Shown one piece after another: positions 2,281-34,303 of a stretch of DNA of 42,977 nucleotides. Source of the stretch: Octopus bimaculoides (Eukaryota). Below the pieces are notes generated by a model that saw only the letters and a list, made by a program, of their open reading frames with translations, did no database searches and had not been told where the DNA came from. A program made the translations under genes and the position numbers. The stretch covers positions 27,918,958 to 27,961,934 of the forward strand of contig NC_069000.1 of the NCBI RefSeq assembly GCF_001194135.2. Reading direction: 5' to 3'. Numbering within the stretch: the stretch's first letter is position 1; each line of letters starts with the position of its first letter.

Positions 2281-3475
2281 CAGAGGCAGGGAGTGAAGCT
2301 AAAAAAATCATAAATTTTCAAATTTTTCTTTTTTTTTTATAGCATAGATGTGTTTATGGGGGGAAATATTGAAAAACATTAATACATATTTGAGTGAAGA
2401 AAAAAACAAGGAGGCTGGTCTTGCGATGTGCTAGAAACAACAGCCAAATTTTCCTGAAATTGCACACTTTTTCCTCTGAAAACAAATTTTCCTTTTTTTA
2501 ACCGAAAAGGTTTCTCTCATGTTTTTTAAGTGCAGAGTGAAAAAGGAAAAAGAGAAAAAAAATGGCTAAAATCGGTCTGGACTGTGATGGTGAGGGGTTG
2601 GCAGGAGTGAAAAAAATCATAAATTTTCAAAATATTTTAATTTATTCCATGAAAAGATGCCTCCCATCATTCTGAAGAGTGTGCTGCAAAAAAAATTAGA
2701 AAAAATCCCCGTCAAAACGGAGAAATTTCAACTTACGAAGGCCGTCTGATCCGAAACTCTGCTTTCCAGAAACTCCTCTCCCTACCCCCTTCCAAAAGAT
2801 TTTGCTTACAAATTTCTTTGTAATCGTAATCTACACCGTTTGAAAGGTATTTGTATAAAATTTCATTAAAAATTACTTATTTTCCTGAAAGTTATGAGGG
2901 ATAAAATGTCAGGTCATGTGAATTTTCCGAAACTCCTGTCCCCAACCCCTCAGAAGAATTTTATTCAACAAATCTTTACATAGTGCAGGAGTGGCTGTGT
3001 GGTAAGTAGCTTGCTTACCAACCACATAGTTCCGGGTTCAGTCCCACTGCGTGGCATCTTGGGCAAGTGTCTTCTACTATAGCCTCGGGCCGACCAAAGC
3101 CTTGTGAGAGGATTTGGTAGACGGAAACTGAAAGAAGCCCATCGTATATATGTATGTATATATATGTGTGTGTATGTGTCTGTGTTTGTCCCCCTAGCAT
3201 TGCTTGACAACTGATGCTGGTGTGTTTATGTCCCCGTAACTTAGCGGTTCGGCAATAGAGGCCGATAGAATAAGTACTAGGCTTACAAAGAATAAGTCCT
3301 GGGGTCGATTTGCTCGACTAAAGGCGGTGCTCCAGCATGGCCGCAGTCAAATGACTGAAACAAGTAAAAGAGTAAAAGAGAGTAAAGAGTATACACTCAA
3401 TCTACAAGATCTAAGCGATTATTTGTTGAAAGTTTCATTAAAAAGTATCCATTTTTCTGGAAGTTATGAGGCAAC
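2281..3475. repeat. AT-rich repeat family built of ~150-160-bp monomers, interrupted by the SINE at 2985-3391
   Basis: GAAACTCCT..CCC.ACCCC recurs at 2769 and 2929 (period 160). A monomer-like segment resumes after the SINE (tttcattaaaaagtatccatttt..gaagttatgagg). Same family occurs at 10025-10340, 11405-11810, 12221-12655 and 32100-32410. Confidence 0.75.
2985..3391 (+). mobile_element. tRNA-derived SINE
   Basis: A-box-like gtggctgtgtggtaa, B-box-like ggttcagtccc, central cttgggcaagtgtcttc, internal (TA/TG)n, tail cagcatggccgcagtc..tgactgaaacaagtaaaagag with (gagtaaa)n repeats. Confidence 0.85.
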
Positions 3476-4202
3476 AAAGTGAGCAGGGTATATATCTGTA
3501 GTTATGCCATAAATCTCCTAAAATAGGTTATAAGCTGCAATGGTTAAGTCCAAAAAGAAGAAAAGTCTGTCATACGAGGTCTAGTTGCCTTTAAAAGAAT
3601 ACATAATTGTAGAAAGGAGAATTAGTTGAGGTTATTTCCAGGAAGTGACTAGTAGTAAAGATGTAAATGTGGGGTCCTGTCAGTGCTAAGAAATATAAAT
3701 AATACTGGAAGTGTTTGCGAAATTGCTGCCCACCTTAGGTACCAATCTAACTGCCAACAGTGGGAAGGAGACAATAATTTAAATCTATATCACATTATTA
3801 TTGTATTCATTCAATAAGTGTGAAAAAGTCAACGCAAAGAACTTTTGAACTTAGAAATTAAAATTACAGGATTAAAATCTTGCTAATGTATACAATCTAA
3901 CAATTTTAATGAACTTAAATTTTTTTCTGAACAATACATCTTTACTTAAGGGACAGTGCAGTAAATTCCTATTTTATCGAAACACCACCAAAATATTTAC
4001 TCTATGTTGGTTACCCCAAGGTGAATCTTAATTGAGCAGACCTATGGAAAAAAGCATTCCAGCAATGAACCTCCCACCTTATAAGATTTATGGCAATATT
4101 ATTTATTGTATCCATTACTCTTTAAGAGGATGGAATGCTATCTGAGGTACATTTGGCTGCTATTATAGCATGGCAAACACCCAAGCAGAGGCTTTATTTT
4201 AG

Positions 4203-8530: not shown

Positions 8531-9848
8531 TTGTAATGTGAGATGATACTTTCAGTTTGAAAGAAGTCCGTCCTATATATATATATTCCTTAAGCATTCC
8601 AAAACCGAGTTACCGATTTTGGCGTATGAGATATCAAAAGATTCAGTACTATTTCAGCTATAAACTAAACTTAATTTCTATTCATATATTTGCATTTCAA
8701 AAATTCAACAATATAATCTTTTCCATAAATCAACTATCAAACATTTTATACGATGATGTCACATTTTCTGTGTACCTTAAAAGACATCAGTCATCACAAC
8801 ACACACTCACTCTATCTCTTTCTCTGTTTCCCACTCTTTCTCTTTCTCACACACATATGCACATACACATCCATTTCATATACACATACATATATCTTTC
8901 ATTTTCTCATCTTCACTTTCTTTCTCTCTGTCCTTTTCGCTTTCTCTTCTTTCAATTTCTGCTCTCTTCAAATAATTTTTTACGGAATGAGTGGAAGAAA
9001 TACAAAATGAGAAAAAGACAGAGACAAGAGAAAGAAACAGAGACAGAAAACAAATTTCTATGGGAGAAGATGAAAGACAGGGATAGCGGATGACAGAGAA
9101 ATGCAGATGTTTGATACCTTATGTATGTTCTAACAGTAAGAGAGAGAGAGAGTGTGTATGTTCATTTTGCATTCCAAAATTGGGTTCCTATTTTGACGTA
9201 TGGGGTATCAAAATATTCAGTAATTGTTTTGGTTATCAAATAAACTATATTTTCATTTACATATATTCTATGTTATCTCAACAACCAGCTATAGTCATTT
9301 GAAAGCTACTGCTCCACAATGACCAGGTTTCATTAGAAAGTGAAAATAGTTTCATACTTTCAATTTCGACCAAAATTACAAAGTGTTGCATTACGAGAGT
9401 GACAATGTTTCAATAACGAAAGCAATGTTTTGCTGAATTAGTCACATCTGTACTATAATAAAGGAAGCTGCTTATCATCTATAATGTGATATGGCTATAA
9501 TATTGTTTCACTTTCATTCTTTCACTTTTAATTCTAATGTGATAACATTAAGATCATCTTATTTCTTTTATTTTTCAAATAAATGAATAATTTACATCCT
9601 AATGTGAACAACATTACGCATCGGGAACTTTCTGTCTTTACGGCCACCACAGCAGAATGGTGTGTCAGTGTATGTGCTGATTGACATAATGAATGGCTGG
9701 AGGTGAAACTCTTGACAAAAAACAATGAGGTGGATACTTAATTTATTTGTATCACAATAAGAACATGGCAAATAGTTTAATACAAATAAAATTTAAACAA
9801 ACATGCATCAACAAATAAGTATAAAAAGTGCCTACACATGTTTCAATC

Positions 9849-10545
9849 AGGACAAAAGCCCCAAGGACAAAAGCTCCTTAGACAAAAGCCCGATAGTTAA
9901 AGTGTGAAAGTGGACAAAAGCTCCACGGTTATATTTTCCGGTTATTTTTTCTTTTTTTTTCTTTTTACTGTTTGCAGTCATTAGACTGTGGCCATGCTGG
10001 GGCACCACCTTGAGAAAATTTTATTTTATAATTTCACGTAAGCAAAAATGGAAATCATAATTGTAAAAAAAGAAAAACACTTTATAGAAATACTTTTCAA
10101 ATGGCATACATTAGGATTATGAAGAAATTTGTGGGGAAAATCTTCGGAAAATTCACAAGAACTGAATTTTTCCTTTGTAACTGTTAGGAAAATGTGTTTT
10201 TTTATTGAAATTTTGGTTAAATACCTTTCAAATGACATGCATTACGATTATAAAGTAATTTGTGGAGAAAATCTTGAGGTAGGGAGAGGACTTTCAGAAA
10301 ATTCCCAAGATCTGAATTTTTCCTCATTATATTCTGAAATCACATTCAACTTTCTACAGATACCCTAGCGTAGTACTACTACACTATGTAGTGTTTATTT
10401 CTACCCACTTTTAATAATTTTTAATGTTTTGGCTTCAATTTTGTTTAATTTTAGCTTCAATTATTTTTGCACTTTCTTAACCCTTCCATCGTTATTCTCA
10501 TTCACTCGTTATTATGTTCTCTCTCTCTATCTATCTATCTATCTA

Positions 10546-10580
<35 letters not shown>

Positions 10581-12941
10581 NNNNNNNNNNNNNNNNNNNN
10601 NNNNNNNNNNNNNNNNNNNNNNNNNNNNNNNNNNNNNNNNNNNNNNNNNNNNNNNNNNNNNNNNNNNNNNNNNNNNNNNNNNNNNNNNNNNNNNNNNNNN
10701 NNNNNNNNNNNNNNNNNNNNNNNNNNNNNNNNNNNNNNNNNNNNNNNNNNNNNNNNNNNNNNNNNNNNNNNNNNNNNNNNNNNNNNNNNNNNNNNNNNNN
10801 NNNNNNNNNNNNNNNNNNNNNNNNNNNNNNNNNNNNNNNNNNNNNNNNNNNNNNNNNNNNNNNNNNNNNNNNNNNNNNNNNNNNNNNNNNNNNNNNNNNN
10901 NNNNNNNNNNNNNNNNNNNNNNNNNNNNNNNNNNNNNNNNNNNNNNNNNNNNNNNNNNNNNNNNNNNNNNNNNNNNNNNNNNNNNNNNNNNNNNNNNNNN
11001 NNNNNNNNNNNNNNNNNNNNNNNNNNNNNNNNNNNNNNNNNNNNNNNNNNNNNNNNNNNNNNNNNNNNNNNNNNNNNNNNNNNNNNNNNNNNNNNNNNNN
11101 NNNNNNNNNNNNNNNNNNNNNNNNNNNNNNNNNNNNNNNNNNNNNNNNNNNNNNNNNNNNNNNNNNNNNNNNNNNNNNNNNNNNNNNNNNNNNNNNNNNN
11201 NNNNNNNNNNNNNNNNNNNNNNNNNNNNNNNNNNNNNNNNNNNNNNNNNNNNNNNNNNNNNNNNNNNNNNNNNNNNNNNNNNNNNNNNNNNNNNNNNNNN
11301 NNNNNNNNNNNNNNNNNNNNNNNNNNNNNNNNNNNNNNNNNNNNNNNNNNNNNNNNNNNNNNNNNNNNNNNNNNNNNNNNNNNNNNNNNNNNNAAAACAT
11401 TATTACATTATTACCCAGAAACGAAATTGAAAAAAAGGTTTAGGAAACGAATATGAAAACAGAAATGCACAGAAAGCAACGGGATGGGGAAGGATTTCGG
11501 AAAATTCACAAGATCCGAGTTTTTCCTTCATAACTTTTGGGAAAATGGGTTTTTTGAAATGAAATTTTATATAAATGCCTTTCAAATGGCATACATTACA
11601 ATTATAACGAAATTTGTGGGTAAAATCTTTTCCGAAGGGGTAGGAAGAGGACTTCAGAAAATTCACACGATCTGATTTTTTCCCTCGTAACTTTAAGGAA
11701 AATGGATATCTTTTAATGAAATTGTATACATACACCTTTCAAATGGCATGCATTACGGATGCCTAATGTGCCGTAAACCCCTTATTTTCGTTCGGAAAAA
11801 TAGGGTGGGGGAGAAACCAGAATAATTGGAAAATGTTTTTCTTTTTTCGATGAATGAATTACAGTGACCTAATATGCCACAATCTGCAATCTGGGACTAA
11901 AATATCAAGCAATTTTTAAGAGGTATGTAAAAGATTTTGTGTTTAAACATTATAATTCTACTTGTTTTACACACACAAACACTAACGTGGTTTTTTTAAG
12001 GATTTTTGTATCATTCTTTCTCTCTCCTGTTCAGACTTCATTACCACTAATTTTTATAACTTCAGCATTTTCACCTATTCTTTTCAAACTTGTTTGAATT
12101 TTCAATCTAATGTAATCCACACTCTAGAAAACATATTTCTGCAAAATGGAATCTTAAAATATGGGTAAAGGAAAGTGGCTAATGCAGTTTCGCTTCTCAC
12201 CTTCAAAAACACATTTATTACCCCACCCCCTTTTCTGAACAAAAATAAGGGGTTTGCGGCACATTAGGCATCCGTAATGCCTGCCTTTTGAAAGGTATAT
12301 ATATACAATTTCATTAAAAGATATCCATATTCCTTAAANNNNNNNNNNNNNNNNNNNNNNNNNNNNNNNNNNNNNNNNNNNNNNNNNNNNNNNNNNNNNN
12401 NNNNNNNNNNNNNNNNNNNNNNNNNNNNNNNNNNNNNNNNNNNNNNNNNNNNNNNNNNNNNNNNNNNNNNNNNNNNNNNNNNNNNNNNNNNNNNCTAAAA
12501 GTTATGAGGGAAAAACTCGGATCTTGTGAATTTCCGAAATCCTCCCAACCCCTGTTGCTTTCCATGCATTTCTGTTTTCATATTCGTTTCTTACACCTTT
12601 TTTTTTACACTTGTTGCACTATTTTTTTTTTTATTTCATTTCCGGATAATAATGTCAACAAAAGACTTTAAAATTTTTAAATGCTGATTTTTCTGTGACT
12701 AAAATTTCTTCAAGCAGTGCCCCAGCATGGCTGCAACTCTAATAACCACAAGTAAAAAAAAAAAAAAATTCTGGCGTCAATACATTCAACTAAAAATTTT
12801 TCAAGGTAGTGTCCCAGCATATCCACAGTCTAATGACAGAAACATGTAAAAGGTGAAAAAAAAAACAACAAAAAAATAACTGAAAAATATAACTGTGGGG
12901 CTTTTGTCTACTTTCACATTTAACTATGGGGCTTTTGTCCT
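9849..12941. mobile_element. Non-autonomous foldback-type DNA transposon with modular TIRs and a 15-bp TSD (MULE-like by analogy)
   Basis: Left end aggacaaaagcccc, right end ggggcttttgtcct. Arms 9849-~10022 and ~12790-12941 are reverse complements. Flanking direct repeats acacatgtttcaatc (9834-9848) and acacttgtttcaatc (12942-12956), 14/15 identical. Confidence 0.8.
11405..12655. repeat. Inner long inverted repeat (11405-11810 / 12221-12655) around a 410-bp spacer
   Basis: cattacggatgcctaatgtgccgtaaaccccttatt at ~11750-11790 versus its reverse complement at ~12245-12280. Similarity continues on both sides of gap 12339-12494, whose size matches the left arm. Confidence 0.9.
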
Positions 12942-13581
12942 ACACTTGTTTCAATCTGCTCACTATGTAAGCAGTGCTTTGGATCAGCAGGGTTCGAACC
13001 ATGTTAAGAGTTTTAGATGTAAAAAAGAACACATGGCCAGATATCTTCAAGGTAGCCTCATGCAAAAGGATAATGCTTGCATCTTTTTCCACAGGAATTC
13101 AAGTTGGTGGTAAAAAAACTTACTAGACAAGATAGATGAGGACCACATATTCATATGTTAAGTATGTAAGGTACGACCGTGCGAACCAAAGGAGATGGCA
13201 ACAAACAGGAACAGGCTCCTTTTAACGCGTTGCACGGTTGACACAAAACATGTAATATAACATAAGATGGCTCGCATGTGAGATGCGAGCAAGTGCCAGC
13301 TAGGAATGAGAGAGGGAGAGACACAACCGTTAGATATATATATATAAAGAGTAAGTTTTATTAGGGTAGTCAACTGTGTGTCTGTGTGTACGTGCATGCG
13401 GCAATATAAACAATACAATATGTATGACGGACCATCGTATAAAGAATAGTATGTGTACATAATATGTGTGTGCATGTGAGTGAGAAATACAGAGCATGGA
13501 ATAAGAGTCTGTAACAGACTATAAGAGTTCTGAACACAAAGATAAGAAAGTACTAGTTCTTAGAAGAGTTACACAGTAGGT

Positions 13582-23509: not shown

Positions 23510-25318
23510 AAGTTTCAGGTGTGGAAGCAAGGACTAGAATCGAAGGGCCTTAGAGTTAACTTAGCTAAAACCAAAGTTCTAATAAGTAGGAAGGTAGACA
23601 AAACACAAACCCCTTCAGGTAGATGGCCCTGCTCGATATGTAGAAAAGGTGTAGGTAGAAAATCTATAAGATGTACCCAGTGCAAGCTATGGACACATAA
23701 GAGGTGCAGCAATATCAAAGGCAGGTTAACTAGGAAGTTAGTTTTTGTATGTGGCAGATGTTCAGGTGCAATAAACACTGAAAATGTGCAGAAAACAACT
23801 TCTGTCATATTCCAGGGAGAAAAACTGGATGTAGTTGATAGCTTCCGATATCTGGGTGACCAAGTTAGNNNNNNNNNNNNNNNNNNNNNNNNNNNNNNNN
23901 NNNNNNNNNNNNNNNNNNNNNNNNNNNNNNNNNNNNNNNNNNNNNNNNNNNNNNNNNNNNNNNNNNNNNNNNNNNNNNNNNNNNNNNNNNNNNNNNNNNN
24001 NNNNNNNNNNNNNNNNNNNNNNNNNNNNNNNNNNNNNNNNNNNNNNNNNNNNNNNNNNNNNNNNNNNNNNNNNNNNNNNNNNNNNNNNNNNNNNNNNNNN
24101 NNNNNNNNNNNNNNNNNNNNNNNNNNNNNNNNNNNNNNNNNNNNNNNNNNNNNNNNNNNNNNNNNNNNNNNNNNNNNNNNNNNNNNNNNNNNNNNNNNNN
24201 NNNNNNNNNNNNNNNNNNNNNNNNNNNNNNNNNNNNNNNNNNNNNNNNNNNNNNNNNNNNNNNNNNNNNNNNNNNNNNNNNNNNNNNNNNNNNNNNNNNN
24301 NNNNNNNNNNNNNNNNNNNNNNNNNNNNNNNNNNNNNNNNNNNNNNNNNNNNNNNNNNNNNNNNNNNNNNNNNNNNNNNNNNNNNNNNNNNNNNNNNNNN
24401 NNNNNNNNNNNNNNNNNNNNNNNNNNNNNNNNNNNNNNNNNNNNNNNNNNNNNNNNNNNNNNNNNNNNNNNNNNNNNNNNNNNNNNNNNNNNNNNNNNNN
24501 NNNNNNNNNNNNNNNNNNNNNNNNNNNNNNNNNNNNNNNNNNNNNNNNNNNNNNNNNNNNNNNNNNNNNNNNNNNNNNNNNNNNNNNNNNNNNNNNNNNN
24601 NNNNNNNNNNNNNNNNNNNNNNNNNNNNNNNNNNNNNNNNNNNNNNNATGCTGTGCGTGAGAAGACCCGGCAAGCCAAGTGAGACCAAAATCCAAGGCCT
24701 CTACCAGGGATGTAGCCAGCCCACTTATGCGTAACATTCCTTCTTTGGACACTAAACTCCGCTTGCGAAGACCTGTTGAGGCAAGTGAAATCGAAATCAA
24801 ACTAAATTTATAGACTGGCACCCATGCCAATGTCTTCATTGAACACTAAACTTGGCTTGTGAAGACCTGTTGGGGCAAGCAAAAGCGAAATCGTGATGGC
24901 ACCTGTACCAGTAAATCACTAAGAGCACCGTCCGAACGTGATTGTTGCCAGAGCACCAGCTATCTAGCTTTCGTGCCGGTGGCATGTTACCAACGTCGCC
25001 TTCCTGGCACTTGTGCCAGTGGCACATGAAAAGATATTCGAGCGAGTTCGTTGCCAGTACCACTGAACTGGCCCTTGTGCAGGTGGCACGTAAAATACAC
25101 CATGTTGCCAGTACCTCCTGACTGGCCTTCGTGCCGGTGGCACGTAAAAGCACCCACTACACTCTTGGAGTGGTTGGCGTTAGGAAGGGCATCTAGCTGT
25201 AGAAACTCTGCCAAATCAGATTGGAGCCTAGTGTAGCCATCTGGTTTCACCAGTCCTCAGTCAAATCGTCCAACCCATGTTAGCATGGAAAGCGGACGTT
25301 AAACGGTGATGATGATGC
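23510..25318 (+). mobile_element. RTE-clade LINE, 5'-truncated, with PHD finger, modular 3' UTR and (GAT)n tail
   Basis: WKQGLESKGLRVNLAKTKV..C4HC3..VDSFRYLGD, then gap, then AVREKTRQAK* and a 3' UTR ending gcggacgttaaacgg(tga)n. Confidence 0.9.
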
Positions 25319-32804: not shown

Positions 32805-34303
32805 TGAAGTGGGTGGAGTTCTTCACGTACGATGTTGACTTTCCTGCTAATGGATTCATCATATCCACAAGGAAGTGGCTCAGTGGATGACATGCTGAAC
32901 CTCTACAGCTCACTAAAGGTCTTAATGGAATACTATCCTATAGTGAGCTGTAGAGGTTCAGCATGTCATCCACTGAGCCACTTCCTTGTGGATATAATCA
33001 GTCCATTAGCAGAAAAGTCAACATCATTTGTGAAGAATTCCACCCACTTCACAAAATTGATCAAGGATACCCCCATTGAATCCAACCAGATAGTGAGTCT
33101 AGATGTGATAAGTCTGTTCACCAAAATCCCAACTGGTGAAGCACTATCAGTGATTCAATAGAAACTGGTGACAAACACCAATCTAAAAGAATGCACTAGT
33201 ATACCAAAAAGAAACTTGATGGAAATGTTGACCCTCTGTGTAGAAACTATCTACTTCAGTATGGACACTCATATATATCAACAAGAAGAGGGTTCAGCTA
33301 TGGGTTCACCATTATCTCAATAACAGCCAACATATACAAGCAATACTTTGAGAATTTGGCTTTAGGATCAACACCACTAAAACCAACCCTATGGCTGCGA
33401 TATGTTGATGACACCTTTATACTCTGGCCCCACCAGGAAGATGTCCAAGTGCTGTTAGATCATGTGAACTCAATAAAGCCATTCATACAGTTCACAATGG
33501 AAAAGGAAAAAGACAATCAGCTAGCATTCCTGAATGTTATAATAACACACACCAAGCATAGATTCAGGACATCAGTATACTGCAAGCCAACCTTCACCAG
33601 ACGATACCTCAACTTCAATTTCCACCATCCATACAGTGTAAAGAGAGGGATTGCTCAGTGCCTAAAACATCAAACAAAGAATATAAGTAGCGATCGTGAT
33701 ACCTACCATGAAGAAATGATCAAGCTCAGTAACAATCTATTATGCAACAACTACCCCAAAAACATACTATCCACTCCAATTATGAAGAAAAGAGAGGATG
33801 AAACCAATAAACTGTCCACAGTCTGTCTACCCTATGTGAAAGGCCTCTCCGAAAAGATACAAAAGATATGTGGCCCATATGACATCAGGACAGTATTCAA
33901 GAGTAATACAACACTTTGCAAATATCTTCTTCGAGTAAAACTACCAATAGAAGAGAATATGACCAAAGACTGCGTGTACTCCATCCCATGCAGTTGTGGT
34001 AGGTTATACAAAGGTGAAACATGTTGCCCCCTCAAAATAAAGGTAGCGGAACATCACAAAGCTGTGACACAAGGAGATATTGATAAATTGGATATAGCTG
34101 ATCATGTATGGAAAAATGGAGACCACCTCTCTCTGTGGGACGAAGTTAAAATAATAGACAGAAGACACCACAGGAACATACGAAAACTTAAAGAAGCAGC
34201 ACATATGCTAGGACACAATAACCTCCTAAGCAGACTGAGTGCAGATATGAATAGCATATGGGAACCGATATTAAGGAAGGATAGAAAAATATTAGATTTA
34301 TAA
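32805..34303 (+). mobile_element. Penelope-like element (Poseidon-type RT plus GIY-YIG) with inverted 5' duplication
   Basis: RPIVS-like YPIVSC, SLDVISLFTKIP, MGSPLS, WLRYVDDTF, VYSIPCSCGRLYKGET. 32805-32915 is the reverse complement of 32941-33051. Confidence 0.92.

What the first reader, a model, noticed from the sequence alone, without database searches (positions are those of the whole stretch)
9834..12956. 3.1-kb nested foldback transposon with an unusually long 15-bp target-site duplication
Seen: termini made of repeated GGACAAAAGCCCC units (four left, two right) in inverted orientation, then inverted SINE-tail modules, then inverted arrays of 150-160-bp monomers, around a 410-bp unique core. 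A 14/15 direct repeat sits flush against both ends (up to 18 bp if the shared cct is counted). Established: Foldback/MULE-type elements have modular TIRs but TSDs of about 9-11 bp, and most other eukaryotic DDE families have 2-9 bp. Inference: a non-autonomous member of a DNA transposon family with an atypical staggered cut, possibly undescribed. This is the strongest novel-system candidate in the window.
Basis: partly seen in the sequence, partly recalled or inferred. Interest (0 to 1): 0.75.

Follow-up and report, generated by a model that had tools for sequence, protein, structure and literature searches.

The report
Old octopus Foldback transposon, ordinary 9-bp duplication
This is a decayed, non-coding Foldback-type jumping gene in an octopus genome; its apparent 15-base flanking duplication is the usual 9-base one plus the element's own conserved end motif, so it does not point to a new kind of transposon.

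Summary
The observed structure is real. There are GGACAAAAGCCCC units in inverted orientation (4 left, 2 right), nested inverted arms, about 157-bp monomers, a 397-bp core and a flush 17/18 direct repeat.

The 15-bp TSD reading does not hold. A scan for the 15-bp-spaced unit found over 120 metagenome contigs carrying animal genes. They hold MITE-like relatives in which every end is an 8-nt terminal motif, GGTATCCG (34 ends) or GAGTGTAG (27 ends), abutting the first unit. The TSD is 9 bp in 11 complete copies and 10 bp in 2.

The window's right end reads AAGTGTAG|GAC on the reverse strand, so CTACACTT (12940-12947) is the family's terminal motif, not target DNA. The real TSD is GTTTCAATC (9840-9848 / 12948-12956, 9/9).

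The architecture matches published Foldback/Mutator families (Tm1, Tetris). No transposase could be found, so the superfamily is inferred.

Two oddities remain:
- The left terminal motif is missing; only AG is left.
- The left flank carries an 8/9 copy of the right terminal motif just before the TSD. This is a one-off and unexplained (chance, templated repair or pseudo-end targeting).

Verdict: a new member of a known kind, of low interest.

The parts
9831..9839 (+). Left flank: C+CTACACAT, an 8/9 direct copy of the element's right terminal motif. It lies outside the element, and its origin is unexplained.
   Evidence: Direct reading; repeat family D10. None of 61 canonical ends in relatives has such a motif at this offset.
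9840..9848 (.). Left copy of the 9-bp target-site duplication, GTTTCAATC.
   Evidence: 9/9 identical to 12948-12956 once the right terminal motif is counted as element.
9849..9924 (+). Left terminus. Only AG remains of the expected 8-nt terminal motif. It is followed by three 15-bp units (GACAAAAGC cores at 9851, 9866, 9881) and a fourth at 9913.
   Evidence: Relatives always have 8 nt ending in G (often AG) before the first GAC.
9925..10026 (-). Left outer arm, inner part. It has an A-rich stretch and a module like the 3' tail of the SINE-like repeat, with the 3' end pointing outward.
   Evidence: Alignment A1; BLAST 9947-10014 vs 3386-3318 at 81%.
10081..10324 (+). Monomers of about 131-150 bp in the left arm, related to the 157-bp monomers.
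   Evidence: Repeat families D1, D4 and D6; BLAST 10132-10323 vs 11485-11683 at 80.5%.
10325..11393 (.). Left-arm-only stretch: unique sequence, a (TCTA)n(TA)n microsatellite (10518-10580) and assembly gap 10581-11393. The content is unverified and may be a later insertion or a scaffolding problem.
   Evidence: There is no counterpart in the right arm.
11394..11816 (+). Left inner arm, including 1.9 copies of the 157-bp monomer (11491-11777).
   Evidence: Inverted repeats I1, I3 and I10; BLAST at 91% to the right inner arm; TRF.
11817..12213 (.). Non-coding middle domain (unique core, 397 nt).
   Evidence: Lies between the arms of I1. ORFs are 52 aa or shorter. No Rfam family reached a meaningful score.
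12214..12655 (-). Right inner arm, with gap 12339-12494. The size and position of the gap fit one missing monomer.
   Evidence: 153 nt in the left arm mirror the 158 nt (156 of them N) in the right arm.
12700..12939 (+). Right outer arm: two SINE-tail-like modules (12700-12768, 12788-12868), an A-rich stretch, and two units (reverse-strand GACAAAAGC cores at 12900-12908 and 12931-12939).
12940..12947 (-). Right terminal motif CTACACTT (reverse strand AAGTGTAG), the conserved 'End B' of the family.
   Evidence: Identical to L119 and 7/8 to GAGTGTAG, which is found at 27 ends in relatives. Chance per position is 5.8e-4.
12948..12956 (.). Right copy of the 9-bp target-site duplication, GTTTCAATC.

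Best explanation
Window 9849-12947 is an old, non-autonomous Foldback-type cut-and-paste DNA transposon in an Octopus genome.

Its design is that of published Foldback/Mutator-related families: a short terminal motif, then a variable number of about 15-bp tandem repeats (here GGACAAAAGCCCC, the presumed transposase-binding sites), then long internally repetitive inverted arms around a non-coding middle.

Inferred history: a transposase supplied in trans bound the repeats, cut at the 8-nt terminal motifs, and integrated the element with a 9-bp staggered cut. That cut produced the TSD GTTTCAATC.

The copy is now probably immobile. Its arms are only 83-91% alike and the left terminal motif is reduced to AG. 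One speculative cause is a transposase-made break at that end repaired with a 6-nt loss.

Shown: the anatomy, the terminal motif and the 9-bp rule in relatives. Inferred: the superfamily (Mutator/Phantom-like), the transposase and the history of the left end.
For: 1. The units sit only at the two ends, in inverted orientation.
2. The scan for GACAAAAGC-N6-GACAAAAGC returned over 120 metagenome contigs that carry animal genes (7tm_1, NACHT, cadherin, myosin). In them the units form the ends of elements from about 100 bp (L109) to 1,300 bp.
3. In these relatives the 8 nt before the first unit are GGTATCCG at 34 ends and GAGTGTAG at 27 ends. The preceding base is variable, so the element starts there.
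4. With those boundaries the TSD is 9 bp in 11 complete copies (five at 9/9 including L109, six at 8/9) and 10 bp in 2.
5. The window's right end is AAGTGTAG|GAC, and the 9 nt after it equal 9840-9848 exactly.
6. Published families show the same design:
- Tm1 has asymmetric 7-bp outer motifs, 13-15-bp tandem repeats in variable number, 8-10 bp (mostly 9) TSDs, MITE-like derivatives, some truncated TIRs, and a Phantom/MULE transposase (PMC3169594).
- Tetris has arms with internal tandem repeats that also form arrays elsewhere, and 8-10-bp TSDs (PMC4079207). The window likewise has the same monomers outside the element at 2763-3478.
- MULE TSDs are 8-11 bp (PMC6446971).
Against: - No autonomous copy or transposase was found in 134 fetched loci, so the superfamily is unproven.
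- The relatives share only the terminal repeats and end motif with the window, not the internal sequence, and they come from other, unidentified animals. No second copy from an Octopus genome could be examined.
- The left end lacks the terminal motif.
- The left flank's C+CTACACAT directly before the TSD is an 8/9 match to the right terminus. It is expected by chance only about 1e-4 to 6e-4 per site and is absent at 61 ends of relatives. Under this explanation it is either a coincidence surfaced by the scan's selection, or needs an extra event.
Confidence: 0.8

Rival explanations
1. One reading: integration really duplicated 15-18 bp of target (ACAC[A/T]TGTTTCAATC, or with CCT). The ends are then the symmetric AGGACAAAAGCCCC / GGGGCTTTTGTCCT, implying a transposase with an unusually long staggered cut.
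For: The 17/18 direct repeat is flush with a perfect 14-bp terminal inverted repeat on both sides. This would explain at once why the left flank and the right end share CCTACAC.T.
Against: - The target would by chance have to begin with the family's conserved terminal motif: 8/8 to L119 and 7/8 to the consensus, at 5.8e-4 per position.
- Both ends would lack the 8-nt motif that precedes the first unit at 61 canonical ends of relatives and at both ends of 11 of the 13 complete copies with a TSD (6-7 nt at one end in L005 and L091).
- The TSD would be twice the 9-10 bp seen in all 13 complete relatives and in published Foldback/MULE families.
Confidence: 0.04
2. The insertion was a normal 9-bp-TSD event, but the left junction was later rebuilt by break repair. 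A break at the left end, for example an abortive transposase cut, lost the terminal motif. It was then patched with a short stretch copied from the right junction, which the paired foldback arms hold nearby. That would create the direct copy CCTACAC.TGTTTCAATC.
For: - It accounts for both oddities together: the missing left terminal motif (only AG) and a direct copy of right terminus plus TSD.
- It also fits the absence of such copies at 61 normal ends.
- Templated filler at transposon-break repair sites is established knowledge (from memory, not checked here).
Against: - No microhomology is visible at either edge of the 18-nt copy (GTG|CC and ATC|AG).
- It rests on a single locus and cannot be told apart from coincidence without an empty site.
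Confidence: 0.12
3. The element belongs to a superfamily other than Mutator, with TSDs of 8-9 bp (hAT, Merlin, P-like as for Galileo). The Foldback look is then convergent.
For: - No transposase was seen.
- Four relatives have the single TSD mismatch at the base next to a terminal motif, compatible with 8-bp events.
- Galileo shows that Foldback-like arms occur in the P superfamily (title and abstract of PMC3573991).
Against: - In the register fixed by the conserved 8-nt motifs, 9 bp gives 0-1 mismatches in 11 copies and 10 bp gives 0 in 2. hAT makes 8 bp. Galileo's TSD is 7 bp from memory, not checked here.
- The asymmetric outer motifs plus 13-15-bp repeats match Tm1, whose transposase is Phantom/MULE.
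Confidence: 0.15
4. It is not a DNA transposon at all. Two 5'-truncated retroposon copies (SINE/LINE-tail or Penelope-like) were inserted head-to-head by twin priming, with a retroposon-type 15-bp TSD.
For: - SINE-3'-tail-like modules and A-rich stretches point outward in both arms.
- TSDs of 15 bp are typical of target-primed reverse transcription.
- Penelope-like elements are present in the window and form head-to-head pairs.
Against: - The same terminal repeats bound elements from about 100 bp to 1,300 bp with two inverted ends and 9-bp TSDs in other animals, with no retroposon tail.
- No hammerhead or other RNA family was found.
- The outermost sequence is the repeat array plus the terminal motif, not the A-rich tail.
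Confidence: 0.02

Closest known systems
Tm1 (Mutator/Foldback family of root-knot nematodes; PMC3169594)
   Same: - Asymmetric short outer motifs just inside the TSD.
- Then a variable number of 13-15-bp tandem repeats making up the TIR, so the two TIRs differ in length.
- TSDs of 8-10 bp, mostly 9.
- MITE-like non-coding derivatives, and some copies with a truncated TIR.
- One outer motif even starts alike: Tm1 A1 is CGGTTAA-GGA, and relatives here often read CGGTATCC-GGA.
   Different: - The repeat unit sequence differs (CGATTCAGTATCCGC vs GGACAAAAGCCCC).
- Outer motifs are 8 nt rather than 7.
- The host phylum differs.
- No transposase-bearing copy is known here.
- The window copy has much longer arms filled with 157-bp monomers and SINE-tail-like modules.
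Drosophila Foldback elements: FB, and Tetris/DAIBAM of D. virilis (PMC4079207)
   Same: - Long, internally repetitive inverted arms with an outer domain, internal tandem repeats and an inner domain, around a non-coding middle.
- TSDs of 8-10 bp.
- The internal monomers also occur as arrays outside the element (window 2763-3478).
   Different: - Monomers are 157 bp vs 220 bp, with no sequence similarity.
- Tetris's own superfamily is likewise only inferred from TSD length.
Phantom / Muta MULEs (PMC6446971)
   Same: TSDs of 8-10 bp, long TIRs (18-613 bp), and an invertebrate host range. This is the transposase type linked to Foldback-like ends in Tm1.
   Different: Membership rests on a DDE MULE transposase, often with FLYWCH, which could not be looked for in an Octopus genome here.
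Galileo (P superfamily, Drosophila)
   Same: Foldback-like long, internally repetitive TIRs that carry extra transposase-binding sites.
   Different: It has a P-type transposase with THAP. Its 7-bp TSD is from memory and does not fit the 9-10 bp measured here.

Membership tests
Foldback-type elements (structural class: FB, Tm1, Tetris) | Long inverted arms that are internally repetitive, with variable numbers of short tandem repeats at the termini. | tested here: met
   4 vs 2 terminal units. Arms are 83-91% alike and contain 157-bp monomers. Relatives have 2-7 units per end.
Foldback-type elements (structural class: FB, Tm1, Tetris) | Non-coding or variable middle domain between the arms. | tested here: met
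   397-nt core at 11817-12213. No ORF longer than 110 aa anywhere in the element and none with a family hit. No Rfam family reached a meaningful score.
Foldback-type elements (structural class: FB, Tm1, Tetris) | Target-site duplication of 8-10 bp, typically 9. | tested here: met
   Window: GTTTCAATC, 9/9. Relatives: 9 bp in 11 copies and 10 bp in 2.
Foldback-type elements (structural class: FB, Tm1, Tetris) | Short conserved outer motif at both extreme ends (Tm1: motifs A1/A2). | tested here: inconclusive
   Present at the right end (CTACACTT, 12940-12947). At the left end only AG remains.
Mutator superfamily (MULE / Phantom) | Autonomous copies encode a DDE transposase with the MULE domain (often FLYWCH or SWIM zinc finger). 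| not testable with these tools
   No autonomous copy among 134 loci; Pfam scans of their ORFs found only host genes and retroelement domains. No DNA search of Octopus genomes is available.
Mutator superfamily (MULE / Phantom) | TSD of 8-11 bp. | tested here: met
   9-10 bp; literature range from PMC6446971.
hAT superfamily | 8-bp TSD. | tested here: not met
   In the register set by the conserved 8-nt terminal motifs, 8 bp gives 1-7 mismatches (only the low-complexity GT-repeat copy L025 gives as few as 1), while 9 bp gives 0-1 mismatches in 11 copies and 10 bp gives 0 in the other two. An 8-bp reading is possible in 4 copies only if one end motif is taken as 9 nt.
   Six of the 15 nt are the conserved terminal motif. 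No relative has a TSD above 10 bp.

The most novel reading that the evidence does not exclude
The 17-18-bp duplication was produced by the integration reaction itself. For example, a transpososome docked on a pseudo-end (CTACACAT) in the target and cut with a much longer stagger, or integrated an end-less foldback. In that case this Octopus lineage would reveal an alternative integration mode for Foldback elements.
Probability: 0.05. Interest if true: 0.6.

Novelty: new member of a known kind. Interest (0 to 1): 0.22.

Why it matters
For the scan, this removes a false 'novel system' candidate. The long TSD comes from placing the element boundary 8 nt too far in.

Two modest points remain of interest:
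- The same about 15-bp GGACAAAAGCCC repeat, with an 8-nt terminal motif and a 9-bp TSD, bounds Foldback/MITE-like families in an Octopus and in at least five lineages from other, unidentified animal hosts. This suggests an old, widespread transposase lineage with a conserved binding site, whose autonomous member is still to be named.
- The window's 157-bp monomers occur both inside the arms and as a free array. This parallels the Foldback-to-satellite route described for Tetris.

Tried and rejected
- Retroposon or twin-priming origin. I considered it first because SINE-tail-like modules point outward. I rejected it after the relatives showed two-ended elements with 9-bp TSDs and Rfam found no hammerhead or other family.
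- Sequence strings in papers: only unrelated primers.
- Spurious-ORF trick to pull other copies from the protein database: the 53-aa ORF across the left terminus found nothing. An exact look-up of a flanking ORF also found nothing.
- Autonomous partner. ORFs of all fetched loci were scanned against Pfam and showed only host genes, RT and integrase. Viral-contig scans with the unit pair and with end-motif-plus-unit patterns gave only chance matches without repeat arrays. A Phantom query sequence could not be obtained from the supplement of PMC6446971.
- More Octopus DNA. Two loci reached through Penelope-like proteins (L122, L123) hold no copy and no paralogous empty site.
- Pseudo-end targeting as a family trait: none of 61 ends shows it.
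- Assembly artefact for the 18-nt repeat. This is unlikely, because each copy lies inside a contig with unique sequence on both sides and the copies differ by one base.
- Deliberately left unused for low expected yield: one protein search, nine contig look-ups and five viral scans.
Full report
**Observation**

The region was read directly. The motif GGACAAAAGCCCC occurs six times in the 43-kb window with at most 2 mismatches, against 0.44 expected. All six are at the two ends of the feature:
- four on the + strand, at 9850, 9865, 9880 and 9912;
- two on the - strand, at 12897 and 12928.

TRF sees the 15-bp period at 9849-9891 and a 157-bp period at 11491-11777.

The repeat finder and a self-BLAST give the following:
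- outer inverted arms, 9881-10026 vs 12939-12788, 83% over 154 nt;
- inner inverted arms, 11430-11538 vs 12604-12497 and 11692-11810 vs 12338-12221, both 91%;
- a 397-nt core, 11817-12213;
- a direct repeat CCTACAC[A/T]TGTTTCAATC at 9831-9848 and 12939-12956, 17/18.

A module in both arms resembles the 3' tail of a roughly 400-bp SINE-like repeat at 2986-3390, and it points outward on both sides.

**Gaps**

The window has nine gaps, two of them inside the feature.
- Gap 12339-12494 (156 N). The two matched blocks of the left inner arm are separated by 153 nt (11539-11691, one monomer). Their mirror images in the right arm are separated by 158 nt, of which 156 are N. Order and orientation are colinear, so this gap most likely hides one monomer.
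- Gap 10581-11393 (813 N). This one cannot be checked. It follows a (TCTA)n(TA)n microsatellite. The left arm has 1,367 nt (10027-11393) where the right arm has 132 nt, so the element's size and that stretch are uncertain.
- The two ends lie in different contigs of the scaffold. The flush repeat on both sides is the evidence that they belong to one insertion.

**What it is**

Because SINE-tail-like modules point outward, I first considered a head-to-head retroposon. Rfam found nothing, including no hammerhead ribozyme.

The decisive result came from scanning public metagenome contigs for two units at the 15-bp spacing (GACAAAAGC-N6-GACAAAAGC).
- Most have 38-50% G+C and carry animal genes: rhodopsin-type receptors, NACHT, cadherin, myosin, kinases.
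- In them the units form the two inverted ends of elements from about 100 bp (L109) to 1,300 bp.
- The search pattern did not require any of the following, yet all were found. The 8 nt before the first unit are conserved: GGTATCCG at 34 ends and GAGTGTAG at 27 ends. The base before them is variable. Each end has 2-7 units.
- Other lineages have other 8-mers: GAGTCCAG/GGGCAACG, GGGAACAG/GGGTCTAG, GGTGACCC and more.
- With the boundary set by these motifs, the flanking duplication is 9 bp in 11 complete copies. Five are 9/9 (AAGGACTGC, GCTGGTCGC, AGGAACGCC, GGCAAAACT, CTATTATTT) and six are 8/9. It is 10 bp in two copies.

As a control, 17-nt end-plus-unit patterns scanned against viral contigs gave only isolated chance matches without arrays.

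**The window in that light**

Read on the reverse strand, the right end of the window's element is AAGTGTAG|GACAAAAGCCCC.
- It is identical to the end of locus L119 and 7/8 to the consensus.
- In this window an 8-mer within one mismatch of the consensus occurs at 5.8e-4 of positions.

So CTACACTT (12940-12947) is the element's terminal motif, not duplicated target. The 9 nt that follow, GTTTCAATC (12948-12956), equal 9840-9848 exactly.

**Comparison with the literature**

- Tm1 of root-knot nematodes has asymmetric 7-bp outer motifs just inside 9-bp TSDs. These are followed by a variable number of 13-15-bp tandem repeats, so the two TIRs differ in length. It also has MITE-like derivatives, some truncated TIRs, 8-10 bp (mostly 9) TSDs in 45 of 53 complete copies, and a Phantom-type Mutator transposase (PMC3169594).
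- Tetris of D. virilis is a Foldback element with internal tandem repeats in its arms that also form free arrays, and 8-10-bp TSDs. Its superfamily is inferred from the TSD alone (PMC4079207).
- MULE TSDs are 8-11 bp, and Phantom TSDs are 8-10 bp (PMC6446971).
- The window matches this architecture point by point. That includes monomers related to those in its arms lying outside the element at 2763-2975 and 3400-3478, where they are interrupted by the SINE-like repeat.

**What could not be shown**

- No autonomous copy or transposase was found in any fetched locus, so Mutator/Phantom membership is inferred, not tested.
- The relatives share only the terminal repeats and end motif with the window, and their hosts are unidentified animals.
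- The window itself is from an Octopus. Its Penelope-like ORF has its best named match in O. sinensis. The corresponding DNA is 86.5% identical, and the SINE-like repeat 80-90% identical, to O. sinensis chromosome CM016859.1.
- No DNA search of Octopus genomes is available. The 42 kb of cephalopod DNA reachable through proteins hold no copy and no empty site.

**Two oddities**

First, the left end lacks the 8-nt terminal motif. Only AG precedes the first unit, and in relatives the motif usually ends in AG or CG. A 6-nt loss starting exactly at the element boundary, with the TSD intact, would fit a transposase-made break repaired with resection of the element side. This is speculative.

Second, the 9 nt just upstream of the left TSD copy (C+CTACACAT, 9831-9839) match the right terminus (C+CTACACTT) 8/9 in direct orientation.
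- None of 61 canonical ends in relatives shows an end-like 8-mer at that offset, so it is not a family trait.
- Both the 9-bp and the 15-18-bp readings predict the same empty-site sequence, with the motif already in the target. Each therefore needs one coincidence of the same size.
- The long-TSD reading additionally requires both ends to lack the conserved motif and a TSD twice that of every relative.
- A short templated repair copying the right junction would explain both oddities at once, but it leaves no microhomology to support it.
- Because the scan selects for long flanking repeats, a chance case is not implausible genome-wide.

**Verdict**

This is a decayed Foldback-type non-autonomous transposon with an ordinary 9-bp TSD: a new (Octopus) member of a known kind.

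The claim of an atypical staggered cut does not.

Residual probability that the long duplication is a real integration product is about 5%.

Noticed in passing
window 2763-3478: A SINE-like repeat of about 400 bp (2986-3390) is inserted into a short array of the same ~157-bp monomers that fill the foldback's arms. Three more copies at 80-90% identity lie in O. sinensis locus L123. ARAGORN and Rfam see no tRNA in its head.
   Followed up: partly
window 33356-34303; L122 8409-11350: An ORF of a Penelope-like retroelement; its homologues carry RVT_1 and HTH_animal. In ENA contig L122 two 449-aa copies sit head-to-head, 243 bp apart.
   Followed up: partly
L001-L120 (metagenome contigs): Foldback/MITE-like families built on GACAAAAGC repeats occur in over 120 contigs that carry animal genes. 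They have at least five different pairs of 8-nt terminal motifs and 9-10-bp TSDs. The host animals and the autonomous element are unidentified.
   Followed up: partly
L109 2063-2163: A complete element of only about 100 bp. Its ends are GGGAACAG|GAC and GTC|CTAGACCC, and it is flanked by a perfect 9-bp TSD, CTATTATTT. It comes from a 32% G+C genome.
   Followed up: yes
window 23519-23866: An ORF fragment with a PHD finger (E = 1.3e-6) that runs into assembly gap 23869-24647.
   Followed up: no
window 9881-10026 / 12788-12939 vs 11394-11816 / 12214-12655: The outer arms are 83% alike but the inner arms 91%. Either the inner palindrome is a younger nested insertion or the arms are homogenised unevenly. 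Its left boundary lies in gap 10581-11393.
   Followed up: no
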